This document shows positions 889 through 38,757 of a stretch of 64,000 bases of DNA, piece by piece. Position numbers and translations under genes: made by a program. The notes under the pieces are model-generated. The model was not told the origin of the DNA, searched no databases, and saw only the letters and a program-made list of their open reading frames with translations. Within the stretch, counting starts at the first letter, position 1. The number at the start of each line of letters is the position of its first letter. Location: the IMG/VR virus record IMGVR_UViG_3300034050_000451, positions 1-64,000 of that record. The stretch is one strand, 5' to 3'.

Positions 889-897
889 TATAAATAT
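889..897 (-). promoter_or_regulatory. late motif ATATTTATA
   Basis: Exact 9-mer 19 nt upstream of the ATG at 869; the same motif precedes many late genes. Confidence 0.6.
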
Positions 898-901
898 AAC
901 A

Positions 902-2575
902 TTAGTACGAAATTGTTGTACTATTAGAATAACCGGTATTAATTAAGTAGTAATTTGAACTTCCACCACTTGTTGGATTATTTATTATAATTGAGGATGT
1001 TCCTATATAGGTAGGGCGTAAATCAGTAGTTGATGAATTTATTATATTATATTGTGATTGGGTAAATAATCTAACATTTGGTAAAGAATTTTCCCATATA
1101 GATTTCATCCCAACTTTTTTCATATGAATATAATAAACATCAGATACAGTTACTTCACCATCATTATTTACATCGTACTTATAATAATCTAATCCATTAA
1201 ATGAATTACTAATAACTTTGTACATTATAGAATTAATATCACTGGTACTTAGTTGTGTTGTAGGTGTTGGAATATCATATTGAATATACCATTCGGTTGC
1301 TGGATTGGTTGATTGAGAAAATGAATAATATCCAGAAGAGTTAGTATAAACTGTTTGATGTAAAACCCATGGAGTAAAATCGTTAATATAATCAAATTCT
1401 ATAACATAAGGTAAAGATGTATTTCCTAAATCATTCCATTTACCACCTGTAACAAATTGTGTATAATCTTCACTGGGTGAGTTATTAGGTTCTCCGGAAT
1501 TCCAATTTGTGTATTGATTTAATTTATATCGATATGCATATAAGTTATATGTTCTATCAATTTCATCGGCTGTTATAGCTCTATTGAATATTTGATAATC
1601 ACCTAATCTAAAATTACCATAAGCTCCAGAACCCATATTAGTAACATCACTTAATCCAAATGCGAAATATTGTCCGTTTCCCGAATACACATACGGAACA
1701 TCTCTAGTAAAATTAGTACTTCCAAAATTTACATTATTTAAATATCCTTTCATTGATGCCCCATCATAAGTAATAGAAACCAAATGCCAAGCGTTTAATG
1801 TAATAGATGTACTTAATTGAGTAATTCCACTACCATTCCAAAATCCAACTCTAAGGGTATTACTTCCAGTGATTTCCATTATTGATTCATGCCAACCTGA
1901 TGTAGGACTACCAACACCTAATTCCGATGATATAACTCCATTTCCGGTTGGATATATCCAAGCCATTATAGTTATTTTATTATTCGAAAATTTGGATGCT
2001 AAATTATTTGTTATTGCGTATTGATTAGTTCCATTGAATGTTAAATATTTCCCACCAGTACTTGAGTATGATGGTGTATTGTATAATGTAGAATTAATAC
2101 CAGATACAATATCAGTTAGTGTGGTTCCTGATGTATAAGAAGAAACATCATAATCAGCAACCAATCCATCAGTTACTTTAGTTTCTGTCCAACGAAATCC
2201 ACCAGCTGCTTCCGAATAAGTATATCCAGAAACTCTATCTTGATAATATCCAATCCAACCAGATGGCCATGTATTAAATAAGAAATTGTTCTCAGCTGAA
2301 TTAGATACGGTAGCTAAGTGACCTCCCATATTTTCACAAGCAACCTTTGCATTAGTCCAAGTCATTGAACCAGTAGAACGATAGTAAGAGTGTCCGTTAT
2401 AATTGGTTTGTGATGTAAACCCAGTAAGAGTTGGTGTAGTACGTTTATATAATTTTACAGCAACATTTTGAGCTGGTAATCCACCCGCATTATACATATA
2501 ACCCGAATATGTAAATGTTTGAGCAAATACAATATTGGATATTATTAATAATAACAGGGTGAGATATCTTCTCAT
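902..2575 (-). CDS. secreted dockerin-bearing lectin: Ig-like domain interrupted by a C-type lectin, itself interrupted by a LamG/ConA-like domain
   Basis: Signal peptide MRRYL...IVFA|Q; the start at 2575 abuts the upstream stop. CTLD halves HSYY..TWTNAKVACENMGGHLATV..WIG and YTNWNSGEPNN..WND. LamG core ITIMAWIYP..WHLVSITYDG..YQIFNRAITADEI. Dockerin YDVNNDGEVTVSD. Confidence 0.75.
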   Translation of the reverse strand: MRRYLTLLLLIISNIVFAQTFTYSGYMYNAGGLPAQNVAVKLYKRTTPTLTGFTSQTNYNGHSYYRSTGSMTWTNAKVACENMGGHLATVSNSAENNFLFNTWPSGWIGYYQDRVSGYTYSEAAGGFRWTETKVTDGLVADYDVSSYTSGTTLTDIVSGINSTLYNTPSYSSTGGKYLTFNGTNQYAITNNLASKFSNNKITIMAWIYPTGNGVISSELGVGSPTSGWHESIMEITGSNTLRVGFWNGSGITQLSTSITLNAWHLVSITYDGASMKGYLNNVNFGSTNFTRDVPYVYSGNGQYFAFGLSDVTNMGSGAYGNFRLGDYQIFNRAITADEIDRTYNLYAYRYKLNQYTNWNSGEPNNSPSEDYTQFVTGGKWNDLGNTSLPYVIEFDYINDFTPWVLHQTVYTNSSGYYSFSQSTNPATEWYIQYDIPTPTTQLSTSDINSIMYKVISNSFNGLDYYKYDVNNDGEVTVSDVYYIHMKKVGMKSIWENSLPNVRLFTQSQYNIINSSTTDLRPTYIGTSSIIINNPTSGGSSNYYLINTGYSNSTTISY

Positions 2576-2576
2576 A

Positions 2577-3026
2577 TTACATTTGGTTAATAGCACTTAT
2601 TAATGATTTTTTTAATGCAGCTGAAAACGCTGATTTTTCAAATGGAATATTTTCATCTTGCAATTCAATAAATGTAGATTTTACATCAGTCTTACTTTCA
2701 CCAATTCCAGTATATACTTTACCATTAATAATTAAATCAACAGTCACAATAGTAACTTTTCTTTTCTTTTCAAATGGTCCAATTGAAATACTTGTTGTAG
2801 GTGCCTCAATACTCTTAACAACAACCATTACTGATTCACCATCTTCACATATACTATATTTTTCAGATAGAATTTCTTCAGTTATTTGTTTAACACCTAA
2901 TGTAAATCTTTTAGGATTTATATTTTCAATTTTAGCAAGACTCTCTACATTTTTAACAGTGTAGCATTTTTGTCCATAAGTTAATGATGTGATTAACATC
3001 AAAGATAGTAATAATAATTTTTTCAT
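2577..3026 (-). CDS. secreted compact CsgG-like protein (paralog of 4603..5322)
   Basis: Signal peptide MKKLLLL..LTYG|Q; likely start 3026. Shares LGV..I..E.L, TG.GE..T.K and F..S...A.KK.L with the CsgG-like gene. Confidence 0.55.
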   Translation of the reverse strand: MKKLLLLSLMLITSLTYGQKCYTVKNVESLAKIENINPKRFTLGVKQITEEILSEKYSICEDGESVMVVVKSIEAPTTSISIGPFEKKRKVTIVTVDLIINGKVYTGIGESKTDVKSTFIELQDENIPFEKSAFSAALKKSLISAINQM

Positions 3027-3027
3027 T

Positions 3028-4597: not shown

Positions 4598-4602
4598 TAT
4601 AT

Positions 4603-5322: not shown

Positions 5323-5323
5323 A

Positions 5324-5647: not shown

Positions 5648-5692
5648 AGTATTGTTTTTTTGTTTAATTTGTTTTGAGTTGATTATAACAAT

Positions 5693-5721: not shown

Positions 5722-7626
5722 TTATCTTAATATAATTTTTTTCGATAGGTTATTGGTAGTTTTTCTAAGAACTGCAACATAAACACCTGGAATTAAGTTA
5801 CCTAAACTAACTTGGTATTGGTAATTACCTTCAGGCATATTATCATTTACTACTACCCTATATTCAATACCATTAAGACCATATACTGATAACCTAACCG
5901 GTCCAAATTCTTTAACTTCAAATTTTACGTTAACATAATCATCAGTTGGGTTAGGGAATATTTGCATACCCTCTATTTCATCAATAGTAACATTTGCCAT
6001 TCTAAATACCTGTATAATACCATTTGTAGGTGTGATACTTAAATCAACACATTGATTGTTACCAGCGTATTTGTTAGTAGTCCAAAGAGGACTTGTACTC
6101 CATTGGTCTTGAGGTCTTTTTGCAATAAATTTTAAAGTTACAACATCATCACCATCTCTTAATGGTTTTATATGTGTACCACTAATATCATATCCACCCC
6201 AAGAAATTTCATTATTATTAGTATTCAAATATGTTAACCAACTTGAAGTAGCTGATTTCGATTCAATTCCTTTAAATTCCAATAGAGTATCGTTGTATTT
6301 TAATCCAAATTGTAATGAACCAACCTCAGTACCATTTGTTAATACCTTTACAGGTATATTAACTAAATTACCTTCCTGAACTGATAATGTTGGAACATTT
6401 ACTTCAATTGAAGTTGTTGGAAAATCATATTCTACCCTAGCATCAATTACATTGTAAATTTGAGATGGAACGCCAGGTTGTGGTCCTACTAAAACCTCAA
6501 TTGGAGTAATACGTGCCATACGATATCCCGTTCCATTTGCATCACCCGGTACTAATACATAGAATGTAACCGAATCAGGTTGTCCAGCAACAATATTAAA
6601 CGTAAAGTTAGTTACACCAGGAATTGTTGATGTATAATTGGTTGTTGAGCCATTAATAGTAGTATATTCAGATTGTGTAAAGAATTTTACATTTTGAACA
6701 CTATTAGGCCATGCGGTGAATCTACCAGAAATTCTACCAAATATACCATATGCATCCGATATACTTAAACCATTATCACCATTAACATCCGATGCGTAAA
6801 AATCAAATCCAGTTGGTGCTTGTGTACCTAATACATAATCTTGTACTCTTTGTGCATCTGCCGTAGATATTACATTACCAACTGATAACGTATCTCCCTG
6901 TATTTTTAATCTAACATCATAACCAGTTGTATCAATTGCAATTGCATTAAATGCAAAGTCACCATTTATATCAGTCATATCAGTTGTAACCTGAGTCCAA
7001 GCTCCACTTGGTCTAAGTTTCTTTTCTAAAGCTACAGTTAAATTCTTAGCAGCTGTTCCAGTTACGTTCTTAAATTTACCATGATAAGACATTGTTTGAG
7101 GTATAATATTACCACCAAAGTTTTGTAATGTAAGTGCGTTATCCATACCATTTTGCTTTGATGCAATTGCTGGATAAGTTACCGCTCCAAATGACATATC
7201 AGCAATAGTTGATAATGATGCAAATCCAGCTACGTGAGTTAATTTCAACTGAACAATTGGTCCATTTGGAATTTCAAAAGTAGATGAACTACCAGTATAA
7301 GTCATTGTGACAGTTACATAACCAGCAGCCGGATTATCAACATATTTTAGGTTCTGAGAAAATGTTGTATTCAATGTAGTAAGTGTGTCTACCCCAGTGA
7401 AAGCTTGTGTATCATAATAAACTCTAAACTGAAATGCTGTTATATCAGTTGTTGTATTGTTGTAAAAACATAGTCCTACATTAGTATAACCTTCAGCTAC
7501 CGTACCAGCTAAATAATTTGAATCAAGTGTTATAAAAACACCAGAAGTTGTTGGCGTTGGGCAAGTTTGTGAATACCCAAAGATTGGTACTAATGATACC
7601 AGCAGTAAAAATAATAGTTTTTTCAT
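5722..7626 (-). CDS. T9SS-cargo scaffold: cohesin - Ig - dockerin - cohesin - Por secretion C-terminal sorting domain
   Basis: Signal peptide ..FGYS|Q. Cohesin-like ITAFQFRVYYD and VNIPVKV..VGSLQFGLKYNDTLLEF..ISWGG. Dockerin ISTADA..ASDVNGDNGLSISDA. Type-A CTD IFPNPT..VYGLNG..LIPGVYVAVL..SKKIILR. Confidence 0.8.
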   Translation of the reverse strand: MKKLLFLLLVSLVPIFGYSQTCPTPTTSGVFITLDSNYLAGTVAEGYTNVGLCFYNNTTTDITAFQFRVYYDTQAFTGVDTLTTLNTTFSQNLKYVDNPAAGYVTVTMTYTGSSSTFEIPNGPIVQLKLTHVAGFASLSTIADMSFGAVTYPAIASKQNGMDNALTLQNFGGNIIPQTMSYHGKFKNVTGTAAKNLTVALEKKLRPSGAWTQVTTDMTDINGDFAFNAIAIDTTGYDVRLKIQGDTLSVGNVISTADAQRVQDYVLGTQAPTGFDFYASDVNGDNGLSISDAYGIFGRISGRFTAWPNSVQNVKFFTQSEYTTINGSTTNYTSTIPGVTNFTFNIVAGQPDSVTFYVLVPGDANGTGYRMARITPIEVLVGPQPGVPSQIYNVIDARVEYDFPTTSIEVNVPTLSVQEGNLVNIPVKVLTNGTEVGSLQFGLKYNDTLLEFKGIESKSATSSWLTYLNTNNNEISWGGYDISGTHIKPLRDGDDVVTLKFIAKRPQDQWSTSPLWTTNKYAGNNQCVDLSITPTNGIIQVFRMANVTIDEIEGMQIFPNPTDDYVNVKFEVKEFGPVRLSVYGLNGIEYRVVVNDNMPEGNYQYQVSLGNLIPGVYVAVLRKTTNNLSKKIILR

Positions 7627-7646: not shown

Positions 7647-7655
7647 TATAAATAT
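7647..7655 (-). promoter_or_regulatory. late motif ATATTTATA for the secretion operon
   Basis: 20 nt upstream of the ATG at 7626. Confidence 0.6.
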
Positions 7656-7687: not shown

Positions 7688-7696
7688 ATATTTATT
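7688..7696 (+). promoter_or_regulatory. late motif variant ATATTTATT on the plus strand
   Basis: 8 nt upstream of the only plus-strand gene, in that gene's own orientation. Confidence 0.5.
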
Positions 7697-7704: not shown

Positions 7705-8160
7705 ATGAAACTGATTCTACTTTTAATTAATTTTTTATTTGTGTTTGATTGTTACTCACAAATTAAAATCGATGATGTTGGTGATAATTGGAAAGCAAAG
7801 GTAGCTACTTCATTATCACTAATAAAACAAGTTGACCCTAATAAATATGAATTAATTAATGATGTATGTAAACATATCACCTATTGGGATGGTGATTTTT
7901 CAACAACAGAAGATTCAGTTACCATAATGATATCCCAAAAAGATATGAGGTTTAATTCAATAAATAACATAGCAGCTATATTAGTGCATGAATCTAAACA
8001 TTTATTTTATTTAAAGCATAACATAAAATTACCTCCGAATTATGAGGAAATATTAGCATATCATTATGAATTGGAATTCCTATCAAAAATACCTAATGTA
8101 GAACCTTGGTTGGTTAACAACGCACTTAAGAATATAGAATATTATGGTTTAGTTAAATAA
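7705..8160 (+). CDS. secreted zincin metallopeptidase-like protein
   Basis: Signal peptide ..DCYS|Q; AAILVHESKH (HExxH) followed by EEILAY, a possible third ligand Glu. Confidence 0.65.
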   Translation: MKLILLLINFLFVFDCYSQIKIDDVGDNWKAKVATSLSLIKQVDPNKYELINDVCKHITYWDGDFSTTEDSVTIMISQKDMRFNSINNIAAILVHESKHLFYLKHNIKLPPNYEEILAYHYELEFLSKIPNVEPWLVNNALKNIEYYGLVK

Positions 8161-9439: not shown

Positions 9440-9835
9440 TTATTTAAATTCTATAACCTCAAATACTCTAGTTTGTATTCGTTTTGTACCATCTGTATTG
9501 GTAAGTATTATTGAGTTCTTAAATTTGGCCCAATCCAACATAAATTTGTTATCCAATACTCCATTATTTTCTTCTTTCACCAATTGGTTTAAAGCATTAA
9601 TTGTGTATAAGGTATTTGATTCTTTTTTTCTATGAATAAGAATTGTATCCTCTAATGGATATGTTGGTTTATATTCGGTATTGATATTGTACGTTATGTA
9701 CAATTCGGATAAATCAGTTTTGTTCTGTAAAATATAAATATAATTATAGACAATAACGTATGTCTCTCTTATATTTTGTAGAGTTTGTTGTAATCCATCT
9801 TTCGTTGTAAATGTACACAATAATTGTGTTTTCAT
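9440..9835 (-). CDS. hypothetical protein
   Basis: Clean 131-aa ORF with its own late motif at 9873-9881; no recognisable domain. Confidence 0.7.
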   Translation of the reverse strand: MKTQLLCTFTTKDGLQQTLQNIRETYVIVYNYIYILQNKTDLSELYITYNINTEYKPTYPLEDTILIHRKKESNTLYTINALNQLVKEENNGVLDNKFMLDWAKFKNSIILTNTDGTKRIQTRVFEVIEFK

Positions 9836-9904
9836 ATATTAGTTTTTATTATAAAGGGGGTTATTAATCCCATATAAATATAAAATTAAATTTCAAAGGT
9901 TATT

Positions 9905-11914: not shown

Positions 11915-11951
11915 AATTTCTGATTCTCTGAAACAATATTTTATATAAATA

Positions 11952-13217
11952 TTAAAGTTTCGAGTAATCAGTTCCCCAGCTAGCATTAATGGGGAATCCA
12001 CCACCTTCAGCTATCTCTTTTAACTTTTTAGCTTGAGATACATCGGAATTAGCAGGATATGAAAATAAGAATGAATCGTATGTGTATAGGGAAAGTTCTA
12101 TATCGGTATCTTTGATAAATTCCAATATTTTAGCTACCCTTTCCATATTTAATTCGGTTTCGGTCGCTTGAAGTAGGTAGTTGAACAATTTTTGCGGATT
12201 GTTTCCTTCAATCCAATCTAAGGGGATTCTCCTATGTTGTGTTTGAAGATATCCAGCTTTGGTACTCTTATCCCACAACTTCTCAATGAACTCCTTAACA
12301 CCCTTATAATAAGGTATTTGCTCAAACTCCTCAGGTATACCACCATATAGTAATTGGAACGTAATTCCTTTACCCTCACCATACTCACAACCATATTGGT
12401 CAGCTAACCATTGGTGTACGGATGTTTTGGGTAATTCGTAACCAATCAACTTACCAATAATACGTGGATGATACGCATCATAATCCATTTGTAGGAATAT
12501 GTGGTTTGGTTTTGGGATAAACACCTCTCTCGTACCATCGGATTTGTTTAGGGCAGAGAAGTTGATTCCACCAAATCGGTTGGATGGACGGGATGTAATG
12601 GTGTATGGGTTGTATTGGGTGTAAACGATATCGTTGTGTAAATGTTTAGAAGCTTGAGGCCATCTATCAAGAAATTTTTCCCTATCGACCCGAACACCAA
12701 AATGTTCTATATCTGAAAGAAGGGGAATCATCGAATCTCCAACCCAATCATTCTCTATACCAATAGTAAAAGTAGAAGATATCACTCTAAGATACTCACC
12801 CCATTTCATAATAGGTGCTATCTTGCCCAAATTATCTCGTATACCTCTTCGGGTATAGTGAGTTATAAATGGTTGGTCCTCAAAACCTATCGGATATAAT
12901 TTATTGTGTTGAAAAAATGCATCAGATTGTAAATCATTTAGGTTTTGTAAACCCAAATTACATTGAAGTAATCCCTTTTTGTTGATTACCCATTTTGCTT
13001 CCTTAGAAGTAGTCAAATCAATCGTAGGAGTCTTACAATCAATATGGTTAAATGGTACAATAAAGTCCTTATCATCAAATCTAACATATAGAAATGATAA
13101 TTTGTTATGTATAGGATGCTTTTCCAAATCAGACCATATTGGAATGATTATGGATGTCTTAGTATTCCATAAATTTAAAAACTCCGTTACTTCAGTTTGT
13201 GACTCTACTATAACCAT
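11952..13217 (-). CDS. compact, divergent family A DNA polymerase-like protein
   Basis: TITSRPSNRFGGINF; motif A QMDYDAYHPRII; motif B KGITFQLLYG; motif C LYTYDSFLF; C-terminal FPINASWGTDY. Confidence 0.8.
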   Translation of the reverse strand: MVIVESQTEVTEFLNLWNTKTSIIIPIWSDLEKHPIHNKLSFLYVRFDDKDFIVPFNHIDCKTPTIDLTTSKEAKWVINKKGLLQCNLGLQNLNDLQSDAFFQHNKLYPIGFEDQPFITHYTRRGIRDNLGKIAPIMKWGEYLRVISSTFTIGIENDWVGDSMIPLLSDIEHFGVRVDREKFLDRWPQASKHLHNDIVYTQYNPYTITSRPSNRFGGINFSALNKSDGTREVFIPKPNHIFLQMDYDAYHPRIIGKLIGYELPKTSVHQWLADQYGCEYGEGKGITFQLLYGGIPEEFEQIPYYKGVKEFIEKLWDKSTKAGYLQTQHRRIPLDWIEGNNPQKLFNYLLQATETELNMERVAKILEFIKDTDIELSLYTYDSFLFSYPANSDVSQAKKLKEIAEGGGFPINASWGTDYSKL

Positions 13218-13221
13218 CCTA

Positions 13222-13253
13222 CAAATATACGAAAATTATTTGAATTTACCAAA
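13222..13253 (-). promoter_or_regulatory. Bacteroidota-type promoter for the polymerase-like gene
   Basis: TTTG-GTAAATTCAAATAATTTTCG-TATATTTG, 20-nt spacer. Confidence 0.75.
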
Positions 13254-14232: not shown

Positions 14233-14264
14233 CAAATATATGAAATTATTTTGAATTATCCAAA
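14233..14264 (-). promoter_or_regulatory. Bacteroidota-type promoter for the glycosyltransferase
   Basis: TTTG-GATAATTCAAAATAATTTCA-TATATTTG, 20-nt spacer. Confidence 0.75.
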
Positions 14265-22108: not shown

Positions 22109-22147
22109 AATAATTTATGTTATTCGTACTCCTATAAATATAAAGAT

Positions 22148-22183
22148 AAAAAAAAGTGAGGATTATCTTTTAATCCTCACTTT
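22148..22183 (-). terminator. rho-independent terminator overlapping the stop of the chaperone extension
   Basis: Perfect 13-bp stem AAAGTGAGGATTA / TAATCCTCACTTT, 5-nt loop, followed by a T run on the minus strand. Confidence 0.85.
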
Positions 22184-22378
22184 CGATTGTTGTTGTGCTT
22201 TTTTATGTTCTTCGGATTCTTTCTTTTTTAACTCAATTAATTTGTTAAAATAGAATTTTCTCCATTGTGATGGCATGAAATACACATCATTCCAGCTGAA
22301 TCCATTACCATAATTAACCAACTCCCAAATTTGAGTATGGAGTTGAATACTATAATCACTCGGTAGGGTAAAAAAAGT
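22163..22378 (-). CDS. unannotated +1-frame extension of the tail assembly chaperone (GT-like product)
   Basis: 71 sense codons (TFFTLPSDYSIQLHTQIWELVNYGNGFSWNDVYFMPSQWRKFYFNKLIELKKKESEEHKKAQQQSKVRIKR) starting right after an in-frame TAA, at the U7 run near the end of 22356..23129. Confidence 0.7.
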   Translation of the reverse strand, partial: TFFTLPSDYSIQLHTQIWELVNYGNGFSWNDVYFMPSQWRKFYFNKLIELKKKESEEHKKAQQQSKVRIKR

Positions 22379-23129: not shown

Positions 23130-23177
23130 AATTAACCTTTATTTGTTTGTATATAAATATATACTTTTTGAAAAATT

Positions 23178-23214
23178 AAAAAAAAAGAGAGATTCTTAAT
23201 AAAAGAACCTCTCT
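23178..23214 (-). terminator. rho-independent terminator after the tail tube gene
   Basis: Minus strand AGAGAGGTTCTT-TTATT-AAGAATCTCTCT followed by a T run. Confidence 0.75.
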
Positions 23215-23749: not shown

Positions 23750-23758
23750 AATAAATAT
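23750..23758 (-). promoter_or_regulatory. late motif variant ATATTTATT before the tail tube gene
   Basis: 20 nt upstream of ATG; exact ATATTTATA copies also lie at 23152-23160 (chaperone) and at 26167-26175 and 26234-26242 (sheath). Confidence 0.55.
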
Positions 23759-26118: not shown

Positions 26119-26245
26119 ATTTTATTTCTCCAATAAGTTTAGTTTGATTATAATATCAAATACACATATAAATATAAAGAAAAATCCCAAAACATAAATT
26201 TTGGTTGTATGATTGGGAGTTTTTCTTCTTTTATATAAATATCAA

Positions 26246-32200: not shown

Positions 32201-35200
32201 ACCCTGTAAATTAGCAGAAATTCCATTTGCTCCATTAGATGGGTCTATATAATATGATGTATTATCCGAATCGTAGAATGTTGGTGCAGCAATACCGAAT
32301 TGACCTGAAGTTGGATATACAATACTATCTGCCGTAAAATCGGAAATGTTAGTTGCAGAAGGTGATGTGTTAATATAAACCGCACCAATTGCACTATTTG
32401 TATTGGTAGTAATACTTCGTGTAGTTCTAATAAGAGCATCAACTGATGAGTAATATCTAACATCAACATATACAGGAATGTATCTATGGTCACCACTTAC
32501 AACTACTTCAGAACCAATAGTTACTTGGAAGTGATTTGAACCTATACCATTTGCTTCAACTAATTGAACTGATGCTGCAGAAACATATCCATAAGAAACT
32601 ATATATCTTTTTCTTAAACCTTTATCGTAGTAATTTTCCGAAAGTTCAACTTCAAATAAACCAACAGAGTTCCAATCATTAAAATCAATACCAATTCGTG
32701 CAACTTCAAATCTTCTAGCTTGAGTTGCAGATGCACCTAAGTTATTGATTCCAAAATATTTATAATCACCGATTTGGAAATCATTACCTAAATTTATTGT
32801 ACCATTTACAGTAAGAGTTCCAGCAATATTTAAGTTATTAAGAACAGATGTACTATTTCCATCAATTCTATATGTTGTATCATCCGAATCATAGAAAATT
32901 GGAGAACGCATATCACCTGTTGTTGATATGGTAGTATCCCCACTATGCCACAATCTTCTACCAGTACCCCAAGTTGCAGAATCAAATGCTTGTCTTGAGA
33001 ACCATAGGTTATCACCATACTTATCTCCAACAATTGCGTAACTTTGTTTAACATCACCACCATTATAAGTTGACATCCATAGAACATCATTCCAACTTCC
33101 ACCAAATCCAAGGTTTCCGTTACTAAGCATGGCTACCTTTAACTTACCAGCTCCGAATGTAGCTGAGTTAGGTTTTTCAGTTCCCCCAGATGAATAATGT
33201 CCTCCTAAAAAAGAACCAGCAATATTTCCAGTAGAAGTATATATTCTATGGTCATAATATGTCCCTTGTTGACCATCTAATAAATCTGCATCTAATCCAG
33301 AACCAGCACCATCTGTACTACCTGTCCAAACTTTTTCATTTTCCCAATAAAGAATACCATCAGTACGCATTTCCAAATACTTACCAACAACACCACTAAT
33401 GTGAAAAGCAATACCAGTGGTTGTAGTGCTATATGATTCAGTCCATAAAGCAGCGGTAGTATAATTGTTGTTTGTTTGTGCTTTTCTAAACTGCCCTCTT
33501 ACTGATACTATTTCATTTATATTTGAAGTACTAGCTGCATCTAAATAGTATGCGGTATTATCTGAATCATAAAATATTGGTGTTCTCATGCTTTCAGCTG
33601 AGAAGAATCTACCATTTGTAAACATTGAGTGTCTTATACTCCAAGAAGTACTATCAACGCCAGATGCAAAATAATGTTGTATATCACCACTACCATCCAT
33701 ATGTCTTAACCACATATTATTGGATATAGTATTTCTAAATGTCATAGATGGATACTGTCCTCTAATATTTATTGCACCATCATTAGGAGTAGTGTTAGCC
33801 CAGTTATTTACTAATTGGATATGGCTAAGTACAGAAAGTCCAGCAGGATTTGTATAATATGCAGTATTATCCGTATCATAGAATATAGGTGCCCTCATAT
33901 CTACTTCAGATGCAATCCTTACATTAGAATACCAACCACCATTTGTTAAATTAAGATAAAAATTATTTTCACCTAAGTAATACGCGTTTGATGCTCTAAA
34001 ATTAGTACCTCTTATCGTAGAAAAAGTAACATCATCCGTTGTACGAATGTTTTGGTTCATTAAATGAACTTCAGTTGAACCTTGTCCAGTATCTATCGAT
34101 GTACCACTTATTGTACCATCTGCTATAAAATTACCAGTTCTTAATGTTGGAGTTTTAGTGGATGTTACAGTACCAAATGATGTTGTTTCAAATGATAGAG
34201 CCCAATCACCATCCCATTGAGATACAGCGAAGTTTGAATGTCCACCAATAAACTCAGTAACAACTATTTTAGGGTATGACCAAGTTGTTGCTAATTCACC
34301 GATGAATATTGTACAATAAGTACCATCATGTGCAAATCTAACAGTATATGCAGGTGCCCCAGCTGCCCCAGCAACACTTGCATTTGTATTAATCCAAGAT
34401 GTTGATGGTGAATAATTATATCCACCCATTGAGTATTCCCAATAAGTATCTCCACTATAATTGTAAATACGAACTTTTAACTCCATCATAGTGTTTGTCC
34501 ACGATTGAGGAAGTCGTATCTTTATTGCTCCAGTTACGGATGATGTACTATTATTTAATGTACCTCCATTTGGATATGTTATTTTTAATACACTACCTTG
34601 CTCTTGTGCGAAAGCATTAGCATTTATATAATTTAATCGAGATATATCATTATTAATAAAATATGTAGTGCCACCACCTACATAAATTGTATTACCAGTT
34701 ATATTTGCAAAAGTTACACTATCAGTAGTTCTAACATTTTGGTTCATCAAATGAACTTCGGTTAATCCTTGCCCAGTATTAACTTGAGCTGCTACTAAAT
34801 TACCAGCTAATGTTAATGAGTTTAAGTTTGAAGTACCGGTGTTTAAATAATAAGTTGTATCGAATAAATACATTGTATCAATTCTATCCAACAATAAGTT
34901 ACCAGTTTGTGCTGAGTTTGCTGTAAAAACATTACCCCCTACACCCAATACAATTCTCTTAGATGCGTTTATGAATTTTAATCCTGCCCAACTATTATAA
35001 TCCCAATCATTATTATCAGTAAAACGTAAAGATGATAAGTTTCTCCAAATGGTTTCACCAGTTGAGATACTTGTCATTGTCAATCCATTTGCTGCAAAAT
35101 AATAATCATTACCTGTTGTTGTAAGATTTAGTCTAGCAAATGTTATAGTATCAGATGTACGAACGTTTTGGTTCATCAAATGAACTTCAGTTAATCCTTG

Positions 35201-38029
35201 CCCAGTATCTATTTGAGTACCATATAAATTACCAGCAGATTGTAAATCAGAATCAGCGTACCATCTATCAGTTGATTCGTTCCAATAAAATTGTTTTGTT
35301 GCTGCGTTTCCTCTCTTAACTTCTATACCAGCATTTTCAGTTGGTGCAGTTGCTGCTCCAATATCTGCATTTAATGTAATGATATTATCACCTACATTAA
35401 GAGTTGTTGTATTAATATATGTTGTTGTACCACTTACAGTAAGGTCACCACTAATTGTAGCGTTACCAGTTACTGCTAATGTAGTACCATCGAATCTTAA
35501 ATTACTTTCAACGGTTGCGTTTGGTGCAGTTCCGTTTAATGTGATTACACCATTATCAGTTGTACCAGTTAATGCTAATACACCAGATGAACCAGATGTT
35601 CCACTACTACCAGATGTTCCACTCGTTCCAGAAGTTCCACTCGTTCCAGAAGTTCCACTTGAACCAGACGAACCAGAAGTTCCACTACTTCCAGATGTTC
35701 CACTACTTCCACTAGTCCCAGATGAACCACCACTACCAGCAGTACCCCTTGTTCCAGAAGTTCCACTACTTCCACTTGTCCCAGAAGTTCCACTACTTCC
35801 ACTTGTCCCAGAAGTTCCACTACTTCCAGAAGAACCAGATGTTCCACTCGTTCCAGATGTTCCACTACTTCCAGAAGAACCACTTGAACCACCACTACCA
35901 GCAGTACCTCTTGTTCCAGAAGTTCCGCTTGTACCAGATGTTCCAGAAGTTCCGCTTGTGCCAGATGTTCCAGACGAACCACTACTTCCAGATGTACCAC
36001 CAGTTCCAGCAGTTCCACCTGTACCACTACTTCCTATTAATCCATTTATTCCACTCGTTCCAGATGTTCCAGATGTTCCACTACTTCCAGAAGAACCAGA
36101 TGTTCCAGAAGAACCACTACTTCCACTTGTCCCAGAAGAACCTGAAGTTCCACTCGTTCCACTTGTACCAGATGAACCACTACTTCCAGATGAACCAGAC
36201 GTTCCACCCGTACCAGCCGTTGAATTTGTACCTGATGAACCGCTAGTTCCAGAGGTTCCAGAAGAACCACTACTTCCAGAGGTTCCGCTACTACCGCTAC
36301 TCCCAGACGAACCTGATGTACCACCATCTCCAACAACTCCATCTATACCACTCGTTCCAGAAGTACCACGAGTACCACTTGTTCCAGAAGTTCCCGAGCT
36401 TCCACTTGAACCACTACTACCACTTGAACCAGATATTCCAGATGTTCCAGATGTTCCAGAAGAACCAGAAGAACCAGACGAACCAGATATCCCACTAGTC
36501 CCAGAAGTTCCTGAAGTTCCCGAAGTTCCTCTTGTTCCAGAAGTACCACTCGTTCCCGATGAACCAGATGAACCAGATGTTCCACTACTTCCACTTGAAC
36601 CACTACTTCCGCTTGTTGCGGATGTACCACCACTTCCGCTTGTTGCTGATGTTCCAGACGAACCACTTATTCCAGAAGAACCCGATGTTCCAGATGAACC
36701 AGAGGTTCCAGAAGAACCAGAGGTACCACGTGTACCACTTGTACCAGATGTTCCACCACTTCCAGATGTTCCGCTTGAACCGAATCCACTTGAACCAGAT
36801 GAACCTGAAGTTCCACTTGTTCCAGAAGTTCCAGATGTACCGCTACTTCCACTACTTCCACTACTTCCGCTTGTACCAGATGTCCCAGAAGTTCCAGATG
36901 AACCACTAGTTCCTCTCGTACCACTACTTCCGCTTGTACCAGATGAACCACCACTACCAGATGTTCCACCACTACCAGATGTTCCACTTGTCCCAGATGT
37001 TCCACTACTTCCACTTGAACCACTACTTCCACTTGAACCACTAGCTCCAGAAGAACCACTACTACCACTTGTCCCAGAAGTACCACTTGTCCCAGACGTA
37101 CCTGAAGTACCTGAAGTACCACTCGTACCTGATGTACCAGCCGTACCAGCCGCAGGTTCCCATATCAATCCAGTCCAACGATATATGTTAGTATCTGAAG
37201 TGTTATAATATATTTCACCAACTTTACCAGATACTGGGTTTGATGTATATGATGGTATTTGTATTGTATCTTTAACTCTTAACGAACCAGTAAATTCATG
37301 CGTATCCGAAGATTGGTCACCAAATTTATTGGAACCAGATGAAAATATTATTGATGAAGATATGTATGTTGTTTTTAATTCAGTTGCGGTAATTGTACCT
37401 GCTACATTTAAACTTTTTAAAGTTGTTGTACCATCTACATTTAAATTACCAGCTATTTGAGCAGAACCACTAACTCCTAAATATTTTTCAGTTACGATTC
37501 CTACATTTACTTCTAATCCTTTATTAGGAGAAATGGTTGCGGTTGCTGAACCTGATTTTAATCGATTAATATCACCAATCGATGCCGCTGATATATTTGT
37601 TATGTTTGAACCATCTCCAGCTAAGAAAGATGCCGATACCGTTCCAGTAGTTAATAAAGAACCGGTTATATCAGTATTAACATTTATAGAAAGTTTATTA
37701 TTTGATATTCTAGCTGTCCCATCTCCACTTTGAATTTTAGATTGTGCATCTGCGGTTAATCCTTCAAATGGAATTTTGGTTAAATTTGAACCATCACCAC
37801 TAAATGAACCAGAGAATGAGCCGGAAAATTGAGAACCAACAAATTTACTACCACTAAAAGCAGAACCAGTATATGATGATGCCAAAACACCATTAGTAAC
37901 TGATAATTTAGTGTTGATATCTAACGATGCCGTTGATACCGTTAATTGCTGTACTCCGTTTACATCAACCGATAGTAAACTTTGACTGACCTGATTAATA
38001 CCATTTGGATTCTTACCTGCGTACTTCAT
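26246..38029 (-). CDS. giant tail fibre (3927 aa): Gly-X-Y stalk, multi-knob shaft, C-terminal peptidase S74-type intramolecular chaperone
   Basis: About 520 aa of GTS/GSS; about 18 FYDSDNxxYYxDPxSTS linkers; C-terminal SDERLK..ALDKISKLNG..GLSAQEV..PEIV..VNYAKVVPLLVEGIKE coiled coil. Confidence 0.85.
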   Translation of the reverse strand: MKYAGKNPNGINQVSQSLLSVDVNGVQQLTVSTASLDINTKLSVTNGVLASSYTGSAFSGSKFVGSQFSGSFSGSFSGDGSNLTKIPFEGLTADAQSKIQSGDGTARISNNKLSINVNTDITGSLLTTGTVSASFLAGDGSNITNISAASIGDINRLKSGSATATISPNKGLEVNVGIVTEKYLGVSGSAQIAGNLNVDGTTTLKSLNVAGTITATELKTTYISSSIIFSSGSNKFGDQSSDTHEFTGSLRVKDTIQIPSYTSNPVSGKVGEIYYNTSDTNIYRWTGLIWEPAAGTAGTSGTSGTSGTSGTSGTSGTSGTSGSSGSSGASGSSGSSGSSGSSGTSGTSGTSGSGGTSGSGGSSGTSGSSGTRGTSGSSGTSGTSGTSGSSGSSGSSGTSGTSGTSGTSGSSGSSGFGSSGTSGSGGTSGTSGTRGTSGSSGTSGSSGTSGSSGISGSSGTSATSGSGGTSATSGSSGSSGSSGTSGSSGSSGTSGTSGTRGTSGTSGTSGTSGISGSSGSSGSSGTSGTSGISGSSGSSGSSGSSGTSGTSGTRGTSGTSGIDGVVGDGGTSGSSGSSGSSGTSGSSGSSGTSGTSGSSGTNSTAGTGGTSGSSGSSGSSGTSGTSGTSGSSGTSGSSGSSGTSGSSGSSGTSGTSGTSGINGLIGSSGTGGTAGTGGTSGSSGSSGTSGTSGTSGTSGTSGTSGTRGTAGSGGSSGSSGSSGTSGTSGTSGSSGSSGTSGTSGSSGTSGTSGSSGTSGTRGTAGSGGSSGTSGSSGTSGSSGTSGSSGSSGTSGTSGTSGTSGTSGSSGTSGSSGVLALTGTTDNGVITLNGTAPNATVESNLRFDGTTLAVTGNATISGDLTVSGTTTYINTTTLNVGDNIITLNADIGAATAPTENAGIEVKRGNAATKQFYWNESTDRWYADSDLQSAGNLYGTQIDTGQGLTEVHLMNQNVRTSDTITFARLNLTTTGNDYYFAANGLTMTSISTGETIWRNLSSLRFTDNNDWDYNSWAGLKFINASKRIVLGVGGNVFTANSAQTGNLLLDRIDTMYLFDTTYYLNTGTSNLNSLTLAGNLVAAQVNTGQGLTEVHLMNQNVRTTDSVTFANITGNTIYVGGGTTYFINNDISRLNYINANAFAQEQGSVLKITYPNGGTLNNSTSSVTGAIKIRLPQSWTNTMMELKVRIYNYSGDTYWEYSMGGYNYSPSTSWINTNASVAGAAGAPAYTVRFAHDGTYCTIFIGELATTWSYPKIVVTEFIGGHSNFAVSQWDGDWALSFETTSFGTVTSTKTPTLRTGNFIADGTISGTSIDTGQGSTEVHLMNQNIRTTDDVTFSTIRGTNFRASNAYYLGENNFYLNLTNGGWYSNVRIASEVDMRAPIFYDTDNTAYYTNPAGLSVLSHIQLVNNWANTTPNDGAINIRGQYPSMTFRNTISNNMWLRHMDGSGDIQHYFASGVDSTSWSIRHSMFTNGRFFSAESMRTPIFYDSDNTAYYLDAASTSNINEIVSVRGQFRKAQTNNNYTTAALWTESYSTTTTGIAFHISGVVGKYLEMRTDGILYWENEKVWTGSTDGAGSGLDADLLDGQQGTYYDHRIYTSTGNIAGSFLGGHYSSGGTEKPNSATFGAGKLKVAMLSNGNLGFGGSWNDVLWMSTYNGGDVKQSYAIVGDKYGDNLWFSRQAFDSATWGTGRRLWHSGDTTISTTGDMRSPIFYDSDDTTYRIDGNSTSVLNNLNIAGTLTVNGTINLGNDFQIGDYKYFGINNLGASATQARRFEVARIGIDFNDWNSVGLFEVELSENYYDKGLRKRYIVSYGYVSAASVQLVEANGIGSNHFQVTIGSEVVVSGDHRYIPVYVDVRYYSSVDALIRTTRSITTNTNSAIGAVYINTSPSATNISDFTADSIVYPTSGQFGIAAPTFYDSDNTSYYIDPSNGANGISANLQGRIQVGTFNNSQTNTGEAWIGRASDRAAGVLTVQLGGGAGRYLEVVDNAWTTVEFSVNDSGVATAAASFRAPIFYDSNNTSYYLDPTSTTSLRTVGSWRSDSSTWDGEFSGKIQYHSNNWYFQAAGDWIWRNSGGSNVIYGNQSGELTATGNMRSPIFYDSDNTGYYTNPAGTSRMNGIAFDAASPVYSVTAGTSYQQHFQIREAGASGANGSAIAYAPSIGFHWSGVVASNITMEASGRISIRNNPGTSYENLVANNMYAYAFYDENNTGYYLDPASTSVLNAIRLGTSANNSTLSGAGDWGVRFTTDVGYIQIGPANSSYAHIYTDRGNFYMNVNDLYLNGNLVPAFGYNRGSGNLFAAIYYDANNTNYYIDGASTSNLNDLQTAGRVVIGGNFSNNAYNSVGSARLHFGGGNSDANDNYYIGTNIEGYGGSYTKLDLRWHTGIRMGAQPGYGGIRFYDTEDLGTLIFSIGTGDAHVRVTNNLYVNGYTYLGNGNADETHINDTLRVGATDSGDSHFYFGEDSSSWYGDHWYWDSGYNVYRYSRFAGTDSLIHYHDTRDTTRITYARNIVFDDFGKGIVGNYSAERLQLVFAMGDSYKPNTAGTSTANMYGIGWSHPNAGGLGGANNLNDHGLLIINNGTFRAAISSRIVASEEVRGTLFRDYNDSGYYLDPNTTGISLRIGGTVHSGGAFSSDGYSSSSPNVVTRITAPQGAAFSSDGSTGAIRIKLPFRGNNPMWTMKVRIYNYSTNQTSEYLLGNYAYDQGGYNSSATFIGGASATAHTVRFGNQDGVDCVWIGETNTGWSYPVVSVIDFTSGFRSSNADSQSRNWNIAVVTSFGTVQTAITPEIRLSNTYAPTFRADTDMRAPIYYDTNTAYYINGDGASNLNTLQTYSYQGNGNVGGTGNASWHPSGIYSAGYNWLYGGINMNGGTLDGAGPIYGTIYYDRNDSGYYADPASTSNFYNLNLTGAKHTYLTINPGNGWEAMVRYIGGSGSSWYVGKRTSTQLLGSTDAFHMYSETAGRTVGGYDTAGNHYAYGSSRATIFYDIDDTTYYMNPNSNTYLYGTFQVNGGHGDSQIGVRLLSGNNGAGAGEINLRMWVSEPGVTWNWGGFGYNVTNNNGSPNGFGRINTAHGQAYMRFSDGGDLYFYNTNTSGTRVTNMEMYPNNTVLFNNYATGGNSLRAPIFYDSDNTGYYGDFASTSRINAINYDNLYWAGDTSYGFIGRNVYADTVNGRGSDPLELNYYDGGDVYIGPGGGNKNLRANLYYDYANTAYYLDPNGTARLSYVVANGGIRIDGNENLYLDNNYGQSIVGVYTSVRYQGIFAMGNAYKLAIDGTGTGNLYGLSWSHPNAGGQAGFLNDHGLLVMNYGTTFAAISSRGWFRTSVQAPIFYDNDDTGYYGNYAGDRSTSVNGFTARTVEGTKGTWKYNIPRFIHTGDSNYWVGSMGWGTTDFNTMMTWGSGFIDSWSNPSNQPSGTSHWVGTQAYHYTNAYNSAYGWQLVGGPIGNLRFRQSWPNAGTWRTVPMLDVNDGNSGAMYAGIYYDSADSAYYADPASTSRLNITKTALKAHNDMSGYGEGNWVSDFNRTPISSFTFGEDKYNGGPSGTWWFQVNMRHANSSNYWGTQLAYGWEDNANEIYQRNITGGSFSGWVRYLNSNNYSGYSNFGTGTVYGGIYYDGNNSGYYGDFASTSRFNTTITDTTYFGSDTNKGRAQGYGTWSNSFHKTAYMSFDWNANYDTYSNHGIASTDLNGSFSDSMSINSFNDINLRLDSNDNNANSYVRIHDNTTGQSVSVAYIGRESGNPIAYFNNRVYGNVYYHNSDTAYYLAPNGTSRLNRTNYDYVYSYNWVYAQGDVIAYYSDERLKTKVGSIENALDKISKLNGFYYVENDLAKSFGYKNEKRQLGLSAQEVQEVLPEIVTLAPFDTETDKNNNIVGSKSGEDYLTVNYAKVVPLLVEGIKEQTEIINSQQKQIDELKEMIKSLIK
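35582..37150 (-). repeat. Gly-Thr/Ser-Ser collagen-like tract
   Basis: Gly at every third residue for about 520 aa; GC-rich relative to the rest of the window. Confidence 0.95.
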
Positions 38030-38041
38030 TAATCTTTATAT

Positions 38042-38374
38042 TTATGTAATTTCTAATACTGATACTACAACATCAGCTGATGTGTTCACCGATGATGTTA
38101 CAGTAATAGAGTCATTTGCTTCTAATACTACTTTTTGGTCACCACCTACTAAAATAGTTGATGAACCTTGTGGAATTAATACTCCTTTAATTAAATATTT
38201 TGTTACCCCAGCTGAGTTATCAGTTATCTGAACATCAACGTTGATGTTTTGAGCAACAATATTTGCTACACTAACCCCAATTACCGTTGCAACAGCATTG
38301 GATGGAGTCGTATAAACACTTAAACCACCCGTTCCGGCTGGTCCTTTAACACTATTTTTAAATGTATTTGCCAT
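38042..38374 (-). CDS. small virion/fibre-associated beta protein (paralog of the outer halves of 52111..52971)
   Basis: MANTFKN..VYTTPS..YLIKGVLIP..KVVLE..DVVVSVLE. Confidence 0.65.
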   Translation of the reverse strand: MANTFKNSVKGPAGTGGLSVYTTPSNAVATVIGVSVANIVAQNINVDVQITDNSAGVTKYLIKGVLIPQGSSTILVGGDQKVVLEANDSITVTSSVNTSADVVVSVLEIT

Positions 38375-38385
38375 ATTTTATTTTT

Positions 38386-38706
38386 TTATCCCAATGCAAT
38401 CGCAAATGCTATCGCTGAATCCAATACATTTACACCATCCACATTAAATGAACCGCCTTGTAAATCTATCGAACCAGAAACCGCAATAGAGCCACTTGAT
38501 ACCAATACATATTGAGTAGTATTACCTTTATCATACCCTAATCGTAAACTATCTTTTACACTTAGGTTAGTAAATTCAGCAGTTGTTACTTCAATATCTC
38601 CCTTAAAGGAACCAGTAAAACTTCCAGTAAATGAACCACTTAGGGTTGCATATGCGGAAGGTGCTTGGTTAATTGAGCCCGAAAAACTTGGTGCATCTAT
38701 TCTCAT
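38386..38706 (-). CDS. short fibre-like protein with SGS/TGS motifs
   Basis: SGSFTGSFTGS; C-terminal SAIAFAIALG; late motif at 38733-38741. Confidence 0.6.
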   Translation of the reverse strand: MRIDAPSFSGSINQAPSAYATLSGSFTGSFTGSFKGDIEVTTAEFTNLSVKDSLRLGYDKGNTTQYVLVSSGSIAVSGSIDLQGGSFNVDGVNVLDSAIAFAIALG

Positions 38707-38757
38707 TTGCTATTTATTCCATTCTTTATAGGTATAAATATAAACAAATTTCTTTTA

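What the first reader, a model, noticed from the sequence alone, without database searches (positions are those of the whole stretch)
889..38741. Late regulatory motif ATATTTATW: the reverse complement of the T4 late promoter
Seen: on the coding strand, ATATTTATA lies upstream of late genes or operons at 889, 7647, 9873, 11944, 22133, 23152, 26167, 26234 and 38733. The variant ATATTTATT lies at 23750. Most copies are 19-48 nt before a start codon. The one plus-strand gene has ATATTTATT on its own strand (7688), which supports orientation. It is absent before the three genes that carry host-type promoters. Established: T4 gp55 recognises TATAAATA on the non-template strand. Inference: a phage-encoded late sigma or RNAP reads a flipped or independently evolved element; alternatively it is a leader RNA element.
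Basis: partly seen in the sequence, partly recalled or inferred. Interest (0 to 1): 0.6.

Follow-up and report, generated by a model that had tools for sequence, protein, structure and literature searches.

The report
Late promoter of Flavobacteria T4-like phages
The 9-mer ATATTTATA is a real, conserved late-gene promoter of a very abundant lake-water jumbo phage group; it is the T4 late promoter with its two middle bases changed, most likely read by a divergent, so far unannotated phage sigma factor.

Summary
All listed copies exist. The raw count is barely above chance, but placement is not. In the window, 8 of 11 coding-strand copies lie in the 2.5% of DNA that is intergenic. Genome-wide, 35 of 41 do (about 2.4 expected), against 6 copies in all on the other strand.

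The window is the first 64 kb of a 270-kb T4-like jumbo phage from lake water, with virion and lysis genes. The box has no upstream partner element, sits a median 27 nt before start codons, and twice follows an intrinsic terminator. It is invariant at orthologous sites in 80 related contigs, in Flavobacterium phage immuto and in phage Mel-JY01.

A second class, TTTG-N19-20-TATATTTG (the Bacteroidota host promoter type), serves early genes.

"Flipped" is not a separate idea. TATAAATA is a palindrome except for its central AA, so its reverse complement equals TATTTATA, 6 of 8 identical in the same orientation.

The genome encodes a 238-aa protein outside the window. Its family profile and predicted fold match T4 gp55 best. 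Pocket residues for the retained adenines are kept; those touching the changed position differ.

Start sites were not mapped. This is a new variant of a known system.

The parts
889..897 (-). Late box ATATTTATA, 19 nt before ORF 270-869 (endolysin-like, phrog_3000/33083).
7647..7655 (-). Late box ATATTTATA, 20 nt before ORF 5722-7626. It is one half of a divergent promoter region.
7688..7696 (+). Variant ATATTTATT on the plus strand, 8 nt before the only plus-strand ORF (7705-8160). In relatives L128 and L132 this gene keeps its own-strand copy; L132 has TATTTATA.
9873..9881 (-). Late box, 37 nt before ORF 9440-9835.
11944..11952 (-). Late box, 29 nt before ORF 9905-11914. It overlaps the stop codon of ORF 11952-13217 by one base.
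22133..22141 (-). Late box, 24 nt before ORF 21914-22108, which leads into the 1069-aa ORF 18698-21907.
22152..22184 (-). Intrinsic terminator hairpin and T-run, immediately 5' of the late box at 22133.
23152..23160 (-). Late box, 22 nt before the baseplate-hub ORF 22356-23129. Orthologous sites in relatives read ATATTTATA, ATACTTATA or GTATTTATA.
23186..23214 (-). Intrinsic terminator after the tail-tube gene, about 25 nt 5' of the hub late box. Relatives keep a hairpin here with a different stem sequence.
23750..23758 (-). Variant ATATTTATT, 20 nt before the tail-tube ORF 23241-23729. ATATTTATT is invariant in every distinct upstream sequence of the related contigs (usually followed by A[AG]TAT) while the flanks diverge.
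26167..26175 (-). Late box, 48 nt before the tail-sheath ORF 23782-26118. It is kept in all but one (L067) of the distinct related upstream sequences.
26234..26242 (-). Second copy, 115 nt before the sheath ORF and 4 nt after the stop of the 3927-aa fibre gene. It is not conserved in relatives, so its function is doubtful.
38733..38741 (-). Late box, 26 nt before ORF 38386-38706, downstream of the fibre-assembly-like ORF 38758-39210.
9733..9741 (-). Copy inside ORF 9440-9835. It may be an internal promoter or a chance copy; not tested.
61448..61456 (-). Copy inside ORF 61300-61680, 147 nt before the 2772-aa fibre ORF. Not tested.
184..215 (-). Contrast class: host-type (Bacteroidota) promoter, TTTG then about 20 nt then TATATTTG.
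13222..13253 (-). Contrast class: host-type promoter before ORF 11952-13217.
14233..14264 (-). Contrast class: host-type promoter before the glycosyltransferase-like ORF 13236-14213.

Best explanation
ATATTTATA (core TATTTATA; accepted variants ATACTTATA, GTATTTATA, ATATTTATT, and CTATTTATA in phage immuto) is the late-gene promoter of a clade of T4-like jumbo phages that infect Bacteroidota. It is a single -10-like box without an upstream partner.

How it most likely works: the host core RNA polymerase reads it on the non-template strand, in the direction of the genes, when that polymerase carries a phage-encoded sigma. The sigma is a divergent gp55 homologue (238 aa, G000:129671-130387, outside the window) made from a host-type promoter. 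It has a sigma-2 domain most like T4 gp55 plus an extra C-terminal helix-turn-helix domain that aligns with sigma region 4.

Compared with T4's TATAAATA, only the two central bases differ (AA to TT). That is also why the box looks like the T4 box reversed.

Shown here:
- enrichment, strand bias and intergenic placement;
- absence of a -35/-33 element;
- conservation at orthologous sites;
- terminator-then-box arrangement;
- a separate early class of host type;
- presence and fold of the sigma candidate.

Inferred:
- that this sigma reads this box;
- the transcription start position;
- late timing, which is inferred from gene function only;
- any role of the sliding clamp.
For: Placement:
- 35 of 41 coding-strand copies lie in the 8.4% of the genome that is intergenic, against 6 copies on the other strand. 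Median distance to the start codon is 27 nt.

Shape of the element:
- No conserved element lies upstream of the box.
- The 9-mer is strict. Among single-base variants, only ATACTTATA is also clearly enriched in intergenic DNA without belonging to the host-type box (9 of 12 copies).

Genes served:
- Downstream genes are sheath, tube, hub, fibre-related, head-tail adaptor-like and endolysin-like.
- Late boxes cluster at 0-143 kb (26 of 36). The host-type class clusters at 143-270 kb (32 of 40).

Conservation:
- Flavobacterium phage immuto has 16 forward and 1 reverse copies, 22-31 nt before its hub, tube and sheath genes. It has 26 intergenic [AC]TATTTATA sites.
- 80 related IMG/VR contigs have 197 coding-strand copies against 8 on the other strand. 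288 of 299 coding-strand ATATTTATW sites there are intergenic.
- The box is kept before tube and (but for one contig) sheath genes while the flanks diverge.

Direction:
- Terminator hairpins precede the box in the sense direction and never in the antisense direction.
- In a divergent gene pair, each gene keeps a copy on its own strand in relatives.

Sigma candidate:
- phrog_234 (gp55) hits the immuto orthologue at E 0.008. The G000 orthologue is 40% identical to it.
- The top hit of the 57-sequence family profile in the PDB is T4 gp55 (7d7c_F), E 0.025, collinear over residues 10-158 against 5-159. hhalign gives E 1.2e-4.
- The AlphaFold model has pLDDT 89. Its best structural match is gp55 in the open complex, Z 10.0, 118 residues, rmsd 3.8. 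Two-domain sigma factors then align over residues 8-223.

Pocket residues:
- In T4, gp55 flips A-12 (onto Y97), A-8 (T99) and A-9 (N13, H95) (PMC7892883).
- In the alignments, Y97 maps to the nearly invariant Y91 and T99 to S93. N13 and H95 are replaced by T12 and F89.
- This fits a box that keeps both outer adenines and changes the centre.
Against: - No transcription start site, time course or biochemical data exist.
- Metatranscriptome material was available only as assembled contigs and is inconclusive.
- The sigma assignment rests on weak sequence scores. The protein alone hits no PHROG, Pfam or PDB entry. phrog_234, phrog_12791 and PF04542 find nothing in the genome. The structural Z of 10 for gp55 is within 1 of other sigma-2 domains.
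- No gp33 homologue was detected.
- The major capsid gene (73077-74717) has no box directly upstream.
- Ten boxes lie in the mostly early half of the genome, some before non-structural genes such as the ssDNA-binding protein and an HNH endonuclease.
- Four boxes sit only 3-4 nt from the predicted ATG. That does not fit T4's 6-nt spacing to the start site.
Confidence: 0.8

Rival explanations
1. The box is a weak host-type promoter: a -7 box with A in place of G and no -33 element. The host primary sigma would read it, switched on late by a phage activator or by changes in template or polymerase, with no phage sigma involved.
For: - The box overlaps the host -7 box in sequence. ATATTT is shared with TATATTTG, and in this genome the two differ mainly by G to A.
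- Immuto's early promoters themselves use TATATTTA.
- A/T-rich patches about 6 and 15 nt upstream of the box recall the AT-rich motifs at -18 and -28 of Flavobacterium johnsoniae promoters (PMC6847099).
Against: - G-5 and T-12 are nearly invariant in Flavobacterium promoters (PMC6847099). In the late class G is never present and the T is not conserved (16 of 36).
- Immuto allows C at the position that would be the key A-11.
- The trailing TA is invariant, unlike in host boxes.
- A gp55-like sigma gene is present and conserved in exactly the phages that carry the box.
Confidence: 0.09
2. The 9-mer acts in RNA, as a leader element for translation, stability or processing of late mRNAs. The real promoters would lie elsewhere.
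For: - It always lies on the coding strand, shortly before start codons.
- Bacteroidota lack Shine-Dalgarno use and rely on A/U-rich leaders (PMC6847099).
Against: - Spacing to the start codon ranges from 3 to 68 nt and more.
- The box follows intrinsic terminators by 2-27 nt, leaving no room for another promoter.
- No other conserved element lies upstream.
- Early genes lack it.
- No Rfam family matches.
Confidence: 0.05
3. The sites are true T4-type TATAAATA promoters on the opposite strand, driving antisense transcription.
For: On the plus strand the sites read TATAAATAT, an exact T4 late consensus.
Against: - 315 of 321 genes are on the minus strand, so such promoters would fire into the 3' ends of upstream genes.
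- No terminator precedes them in that direction, against 4 in the sense direction.
- In a divergent gene pair the box follows each gene's own strand.
- On the coding strand, 6 of the 9 intergenic TATAAATA copies are just the leader of host-type promoters.
- In run X15, RNA-contig depth lies downstream of the sheath box and is near zero upstream. This is weak, and run X19 shows no drop.
Confidence: 0.02
4. It is a chance product of A+T-rich intergenic DNA.
For: The raw count of ATATTTATW on both strands of the window is only 17 against 10.7 expected.
Against: - 35 intergenic coding-strand copies are observed against 2.4 in Markov simulations of the same intergenic DNA, with 1 on the other strand.
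- Orthologous sites keep the box while their flanks diverge.
Confidence: 0.01

Closest known systems
Bacteriophage T4 late promoter (TATAAATA) read by gp55, with gp33 and the gp45 sliding clamp
   Same: - An 8-9 bp A/T-only box with no -35 partner, placed in front of virion and lysis genes of a T4-like myovirus.
- 6 of 8 bases are identical in the same orientation, including the two adenines that gp55 buries in deep pockets (-12 and -8).
- A gp55-like sigma-2 protein and a gp45-type clamp are encoded, next to a T4-type DNA polymerase and clamp loader.
   Different: - The centre is TT, not AA.
- The residues that touch A-9 in T4 (N13, H95) are replaced.
- The sigma is longer (238 against 185 aa), with an added sigma-4-like helix-turn-helix domain.
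- No gp33 was found.
- The host is Bacteroidota, whose polymerase uses -33/-7 promoters.
- Four sites imply a shorter box-to-start distance than in T4.
Bacteroidota primary-sigma promoters (-33 TTTG, -7 TAnnTTTG)
   Same: The late box shares ATATTT with the -7 box that this phage's own early promoters use (TATATTTG), and it shows similar periodic A/T-rich patches upstream.
   Different: - No -33 element.
- A replaces the invariant G.
- The leading T is not conserved.
- An invariant TA follows the box.
- It serves a different gene class in a different half of the genome.
Late promoters of cyanophage and other T4-like phages (NATAAATA-type, from general knowledge)
   Same: The same logic: a short -10-like box serves the late genes.
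   Different: As far as I know, those keep the A-rich centre. I found no paper describing a T-centred version.

Membership tests
T4-type late promoter | The consensus TATAAATA lies on the non-template strand. | tested here: not met
   The core is TATTTATA: 6 of 8 identical, with the central AA changed to TT. On the coding strand, canonical TATAAATA occurs 9 times in intergenic DNA, 6 of them as part of early-promoter leaders.
T4-type late promoter | No -35 element; a single -10-like box is enough. | tested here: met
   No information-rich position lies upstream of the box in 36 aligned sites. The early class, by contrast, has a clear TTTG.
T4-type late promoter | It precedes late (virion, lysis) genes. 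| tested here: met
   It precedes sheath, tube, hub, fibre-associated, adaptor-like and endolysin-like genes. Timing itself was not measured.
T4-type late promoter | The box lies at -13 to -6, with the start site 6 nt downstream. | not testable with these tools
   No 5'-end data are available; only assembled RNA contigs. Four sites 3-4 nt from an ATG argue for a shorter spacing.
T4-type late promoter | It depends on a gp55-family sigma. | tested here: inconclusive
   A candidate is present. Dependence of the box on it cannot be tested here.
T4-type late promoter | It is activated by the gp45 clamp through gp33 and clamp-binding tails. | tested here: inconclusive
   - A clamp is present.
- gp33 was not detected.
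- The sigma ends in MDFFAY and the DNA polymerase in KFFAF. T4's tails are SLDFLY, TLDFLL and SLDFLFG.
- The complex prediction gave no verdict.
gp55 family (for the 238-aa protein) | Sequence membership in phrog_234 or significant similarity to gp55. | tested here: inconclusive
   - The protein alone gives no hit.
- Its immuto orthologue hits at E 0.008.
- The family profile against the PDB puts gp55 top at E 0.025.
- hhalign gives probability 55%, E 1.2e-4.
gp55 family (for the 238-aa protein) | A sigma region-2 fold with the gp55-specific helix-loop-helix. | tested here: met
   The best structural match is 7d7c_F, Z 10.0 over 118 of 137 residues. Other sigma-2 domains score within about 1 Z.
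gp55 family (for the 238-aa protein) | No region 4 (T4 gp55 is sigma-2 only). | tested here: not met
   - The C-terminal 80 residues fold as a helix-turn-helix.
- Two-domain sigma factors align across residues 8-223.
- The profile hits TrpR-like HTH proteins at E 0.065.
Bacteroidota sigma-A promoter | A -7 box TAnnTTTG and a -33 TTTG. | tested here: not met
   The late box has A in place of G in all copies and no TTTG upstream. The phage's other class meets both features.
Known RNA families (Rfam 15) | A match at gathering score. | tested here: not met
   There are no matches in the window.

The most novel reading that the evidence does not exclude
This clade shows a natural specificity swap in the gp55 system. 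The sigma keeps the two deep adenine pockets of T4 gp55 but has re-tooled the pocket for the central bases (N13 to T, H95 to F), so it reads TATTTATA.

Because the T4 box is palindromic apart from its centre, that swap reverses the apparent polarity of the box.

The same protein has gained a sigma-4-like domain that may stand in for the missing gp33. In this phage it also carries a polymerase-like FFA[FY] tail that would tether it to the sliding clamp, so one polypeptide would do the work of gp55 plus gp33.
Probability: 0.3. Interest if true: 0.65.

Novelty: new variant of a known kind. Interest (0 to 1): 0.5.

Why it matters
- **Annotation.** It gives a usable late-promoter rule (TATTTATA, no upstream element) and an early-promoter rule for a phage group that is very abundant in lake and marine metagenomes. 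The sigma family has more than 8,000 clusters at 90% identity and 1,464 representatives at 50%, and every copy with a source name, public phage records included, is called hypothetical.
- **How promoters set direction.** The two central bases of the T4-type box carry its polarity. The data pair a natural promoter change with changes in the sigma residues that touch that position, which can be tested directly by residue swaps.
- **Host prediction.** The host-type early promoters also give a sequence-only way to assign such uncultured phages to Bacteroidota hosts.

Tried and rejected
- Direct searches of the genome with T4 gp55 and gp45 proteins found nothing.
- The family models phrog_234, phrog_12791 and PF04542 found no sigma in the genome. 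The candidate was reached only through its immuto orthologue.
- The candidate alone hit no PHROG, Pfam or PDB sequence.
- phrog_254 (gp33) gave no hit. This is a weak negative, because gp55 was missed the same way.
- The search for related loci with the sigma alignment failed for lack of a conserved stretch.
- The complex prediction of the clamp with the sigma tail gave no verdict, which is neither support nor evidence against.
- Metatranscriptome runs were available only as contigs of relatives at 85-99% identity.
  - They cover tube and sheath.
  - In X15, depth falls about 25-fold after the tube terminator and to about zero upstream of the sheath box.
  - X19 shows no drop, and contigs cannot show starts or strand.
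  - This is inconclusive.
- A 40-kb stretch of the 484-kb uncultured phage LR756508 around its sigma gene showed no enrichment of the box and was uninformative.
- Aligning the box to the host -7 box was considered as the primary register. It became less likely because immuto tolerates C at the position that would be A-11.
- A phage RNA polymerase hidden in the giant ORFs was rejected: the two largest are collagen-repeat fibres, one with an S74 chaperone domain.
- E. coli-type -35/-10 promoters are not enriched: 15 found against 22.9 expected.
- Paper searches found no earlier description of this box.
Full report
**What the window is**

The window is the first 64 kb of a single 270,865-bp virus contig (32.8% G+C) that occurs in many lake-water metagenomes. 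A crude codon-bias gene caller puts 315 of 321 genes on the minus strand.

The window encodes:
- a tail sheath (23782-26118), tail tube (23241-23729) and baseplate hub (22356-23129);
- an endolysin (8174-8995) and a fibre-assembly-like protein;
- giant ORFs of 3927, 3994 and 2772 aa. The two largest carry collagen repeats, and the 3927-aa one has a C-terminal S74 chaperone domain, so they are fibres and not polymerases.

The nearest cultured relatives are Flavobacterium phage vB_FspM_immuto and 'Microcystis' phage Mel-JY01. Elsewhere the genome has a T4-type DNA polymerase, sliding clamp and clamp loader in a row, and a block of 25 tRNA genes.

**The observation**

Counted naively, ATATTTATW is hardly over-represented: 17 against 10.7, and 4 of 100 shuffles reach 17.

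The evidence lies in strand and placement.
- In the window, 8 of 11 coding-strand ATATTTATA copies lie in the 1,569 bp (2.5%) that is intergenic. Simulation gives a mean of 0.45, and P is about 2e-11. A ninth copy touches a stop codon.
- Genome-wide, 41 copies are on the coding strand and 6 on the other. 35 of the 41 are intergenic, against about 2.4 expected.
- The median distance to the start codon is 27 nt.
- The 9-mer is strict. Among single-base variants, only ATACTTATA (9 of 12 copies intergenic) is also clearly enriched without belonging to the host-type box.
- Thirty-six aligned sites show no conserved upstream element. There are only weak A/T-rich patches about 6 and 15 nt upstream.

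**A second promoter class**

Unbiased k-mer enrichment in intergenic DNA found a stronger motif, TTCGTATATTTG(TA).
- It has 40 intergenic TATATTTG sites on the coding strand and 1 on the other.
- It has a clear TTTG about 20 nt upstream.
- This is the -33 TTTG / -7 TAnnTTTG promoter type of Bacteroidota (PMC6847099), so the host is almost certainly a member of that phylum.
- These sites cluster at 143-270 kb (32 of 40), while the late box clusters at 0-143 kb (26 of 36).

**Conservation**

- Phage immuto has 16 forward and 1 reverse copies of ATATTTATA, 22-31 nt before its hub, tube and sheath genes. Its late consensus is [AC]TATTTATA, with 26 intergenic sites.
- Mel-JY01 has 17 forward and 6 reverse copies, including one before its tube gene.
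- In 80 IMG/VR contigs whose tube protein is 80-100% identical to the window's, there are 197 coding-strand copies against 8 on the other strand. 288 of 299 coding-strand ATATTTATW sites there are intergenic.
- Before the sheath gene the box is kept in all but one of the distinct related sequences, amid diverged flanks.
- Before the tube gene the variant ATATTTATT is invariant.
- Before the hub gene, orthologous sites read ATATTTATA, ATACTTATA or GTATTTATA.

The shared core is therefore TATTTATA.

**Direction of action**

- After the tube gene, every relative has a G+C-rich hairpin with a T-run. The stem sequences differ between lineages. About 20-25 nt further on comes the box, then 22-30 nt, then the hub start codon.
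- The window's terminators at 23214-23186 and 22184-22152 were also found by an independent scan.
- Strict terminators precede 4 of 36 boxes in the sense direction and none in the antisense direction.
- The divergent pair at 7626/7705 keeps one copy per gene, each on that gene's own strand, in relatives 62-67% identical.

So the box works in the direction of the genes, and there is no room for another promoter between terminator and box.

**'Reverse complement of T4'**

The T4 box TATAAATA is palindromic except for its central AA. Its reverse complement, TATTTATA, is therefore identical to a same-orientation copy with AA changed to TT. 'Flipped' and 'diverged at two positions' are one and the same statement about the sequence.

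What decides the biology is which strand is read, and the context says the coding strand.

In T4, gp55 reads non-template single-stranded DNA. It buries A-12 (stacked on Y97) and A-8 (bonded to T99) in deep pockets, and A-9 in a shallow pocket formed by N13 and H95 (PMC7892883). In the same register, TATTTATA keeps both deep-pocket adenines and changes positions -10 and -9.

**The sigma candidate**

Direct searches failed. However, phrog_234 gave a weak hit in immuto (E 0.008), and its orthologue in this genome is a 238-aa protein at 129671-130387 (40% identity).

Alone, this protein matches nothing. Its family is very large and is unnamed, or called only 'hypothetical protein', by its sources.

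With a family profile and a model, the picture is clearer.
- A 57-member profile has T4 gp55 as its top PDB hit: E 0.025, collinear over nearly the whole of gp55. hhalign gives E 1.2e-4.
- The AlphaFold model (pLDDT 89) matches gp55 in the open complex best (Z 10.0, 118 residues).
- After that it matches many sigma factors over both domains, which shows an extra sigma-4-like helix-turn-helix.
- In the alignments, Y97 maps to the nearly invariant Y91, T99 to S93 and F86 to F81. N13 and H95 map to T12 and F89.

That pattern fits the promoter change, but it rests on low-scoring alignments and is an inference.

The gene lies at the end of an operon with a host-type promoter, and is followed by a terminator-like hairpin with a T-run and a late box. 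This is the layout expected for an early-to-late cascade.

**Clamp link (speculative)**

- The sigma ends in MDFFAY and the DNA polymerase in KFFAF.
- T4 gp55, gp33 and gp43 share SLDFLY, TLDFLL and SLDFLFG.
- About 17 of 57 family members end in a similar aromatic tail, but the immuto and Mel-JY01 sigmas do not.
- gp33 was not detected.
- The complex prediction gave no verdict.

**Geometry**

Four boxes lie 3-4 nt from well-supported ATG starts. Those genes need a start site at most 4-5 nt after the box, giving leaderless or nearly leaderless mRNAs. This resembles the 4-5 nt spacing reported for Flavobacterium johnsoniae rather than T4's 6 nt. Only 5'-end mapping can settle it.

**RNA data**

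Metatranscriptome contigs of relatives cover the tube and sheath genes. In one run, depth drops about 25-fold after the tube terminator and to near zero upstream of the sheath box. Another run shows no drop, and contigs cannot show starts or strand. I count this as inconclusive.

**Verdict**

This is a real, conserved late promoter of T4 type with a T-centred box, in a clade of Bacteroidota phages. It is probably read by a divergent two-domain gp55 homologue.

It is a new variant of a known system and not a new kind of element. I found no earlier description of it.

Noticed in passing
L098-L108 (PP395634.1, 'Microcystis phage Mel-JY01'): This phage, recorded as infecting Microcystis, has upstream regions enriched in TTCGTATATTTG, the Bacteroidota -7 box. 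It also carries the same late box and the same gp55-like sigma. Its promoters therefore look made for a Bacteroidota host, which raises doubt about the recorded host.
   Followed up: partly
window 26246-38029, 40104-52088, 52982-61300 (minus strand): Three giant ORFs of 3927, 3994 and 2772 aa. The first two carry many collagen triple-helix repeats, and the first has a C-terminal S74 intramolecular chaperone domain. They are G+C-richer than their surroundings and throw up long spurious ORFs on the opposite strand.
   Followed up: partly
G000:253354-255825 and 129671-130387: The T4-type DNA polymerase ends in KFFAF and the sigma candidate in MDFFAY. This recalls the shared clamp-binding tails of T4 gp43, gp55 and gp33. 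About 17 of 57 sigma relatives have such a tail.
   Followed up: partly
window 11952-14213 (minus strand): Two genes sit behind host-type promoters in the middle of the late region. One is a 421-aa ORF with a partial DNA-polymerase-like match (phrog_17). The other is a GtrB-like glycosyltransferase. They look like early-expressed inserts.
   Followed up: no
G000: 162290, 186782, 187433, 190313, 269863, 270321: Six host-type promoters are followed at once by the canonical T4 box (TATATTTG then TATAAATA) and a shared leader, AAATAAGTTATG. This may be a conserved leader or a dual promoter.
   Followed up: no
window 184 and G000:270811: The same promoter region (at least 83 nt identical) stands at both ends of the contig. 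The assembly therefore probably wraps a circular or terminally redundant genome of about 270.6 kb. An exact end-to-end repeat was not found.
   Followed up: partly
G000:179964-186124 (minus strand): A block of 25 tRNA genes covers nearly all amino acids. It explains the T-loop k-mers seen in the intergenic enrichment.
   Followed up: yes
window 26119-26166 and the same place in L023-L095: The sheath leader carries a short inverted repeat (TTTGAT...ATCAAA in the window), and most relatives have a similar one just after the box. It may be a 5' stem-loop of the late mRNA.
   Followed up: no
L109-L116 (immuto, NC_055915.1), 60-77 kb: Fifteen immuto early promoters share GTTG, about 20 nt, then TATATTTAGG, and most continue with a near-identical leader, TATCAATAATTAAAAC. 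Here the -7 box ends in A, not G.
   Followed up: partly
G000:73077-74717: The major capsid gene (phmmer E 1e-160 to the Mel-JY01 capsid protein) has no late box directly upstream. It seems to lie inside a long operon whose nearest box is at 81114.
   Followed up: partly
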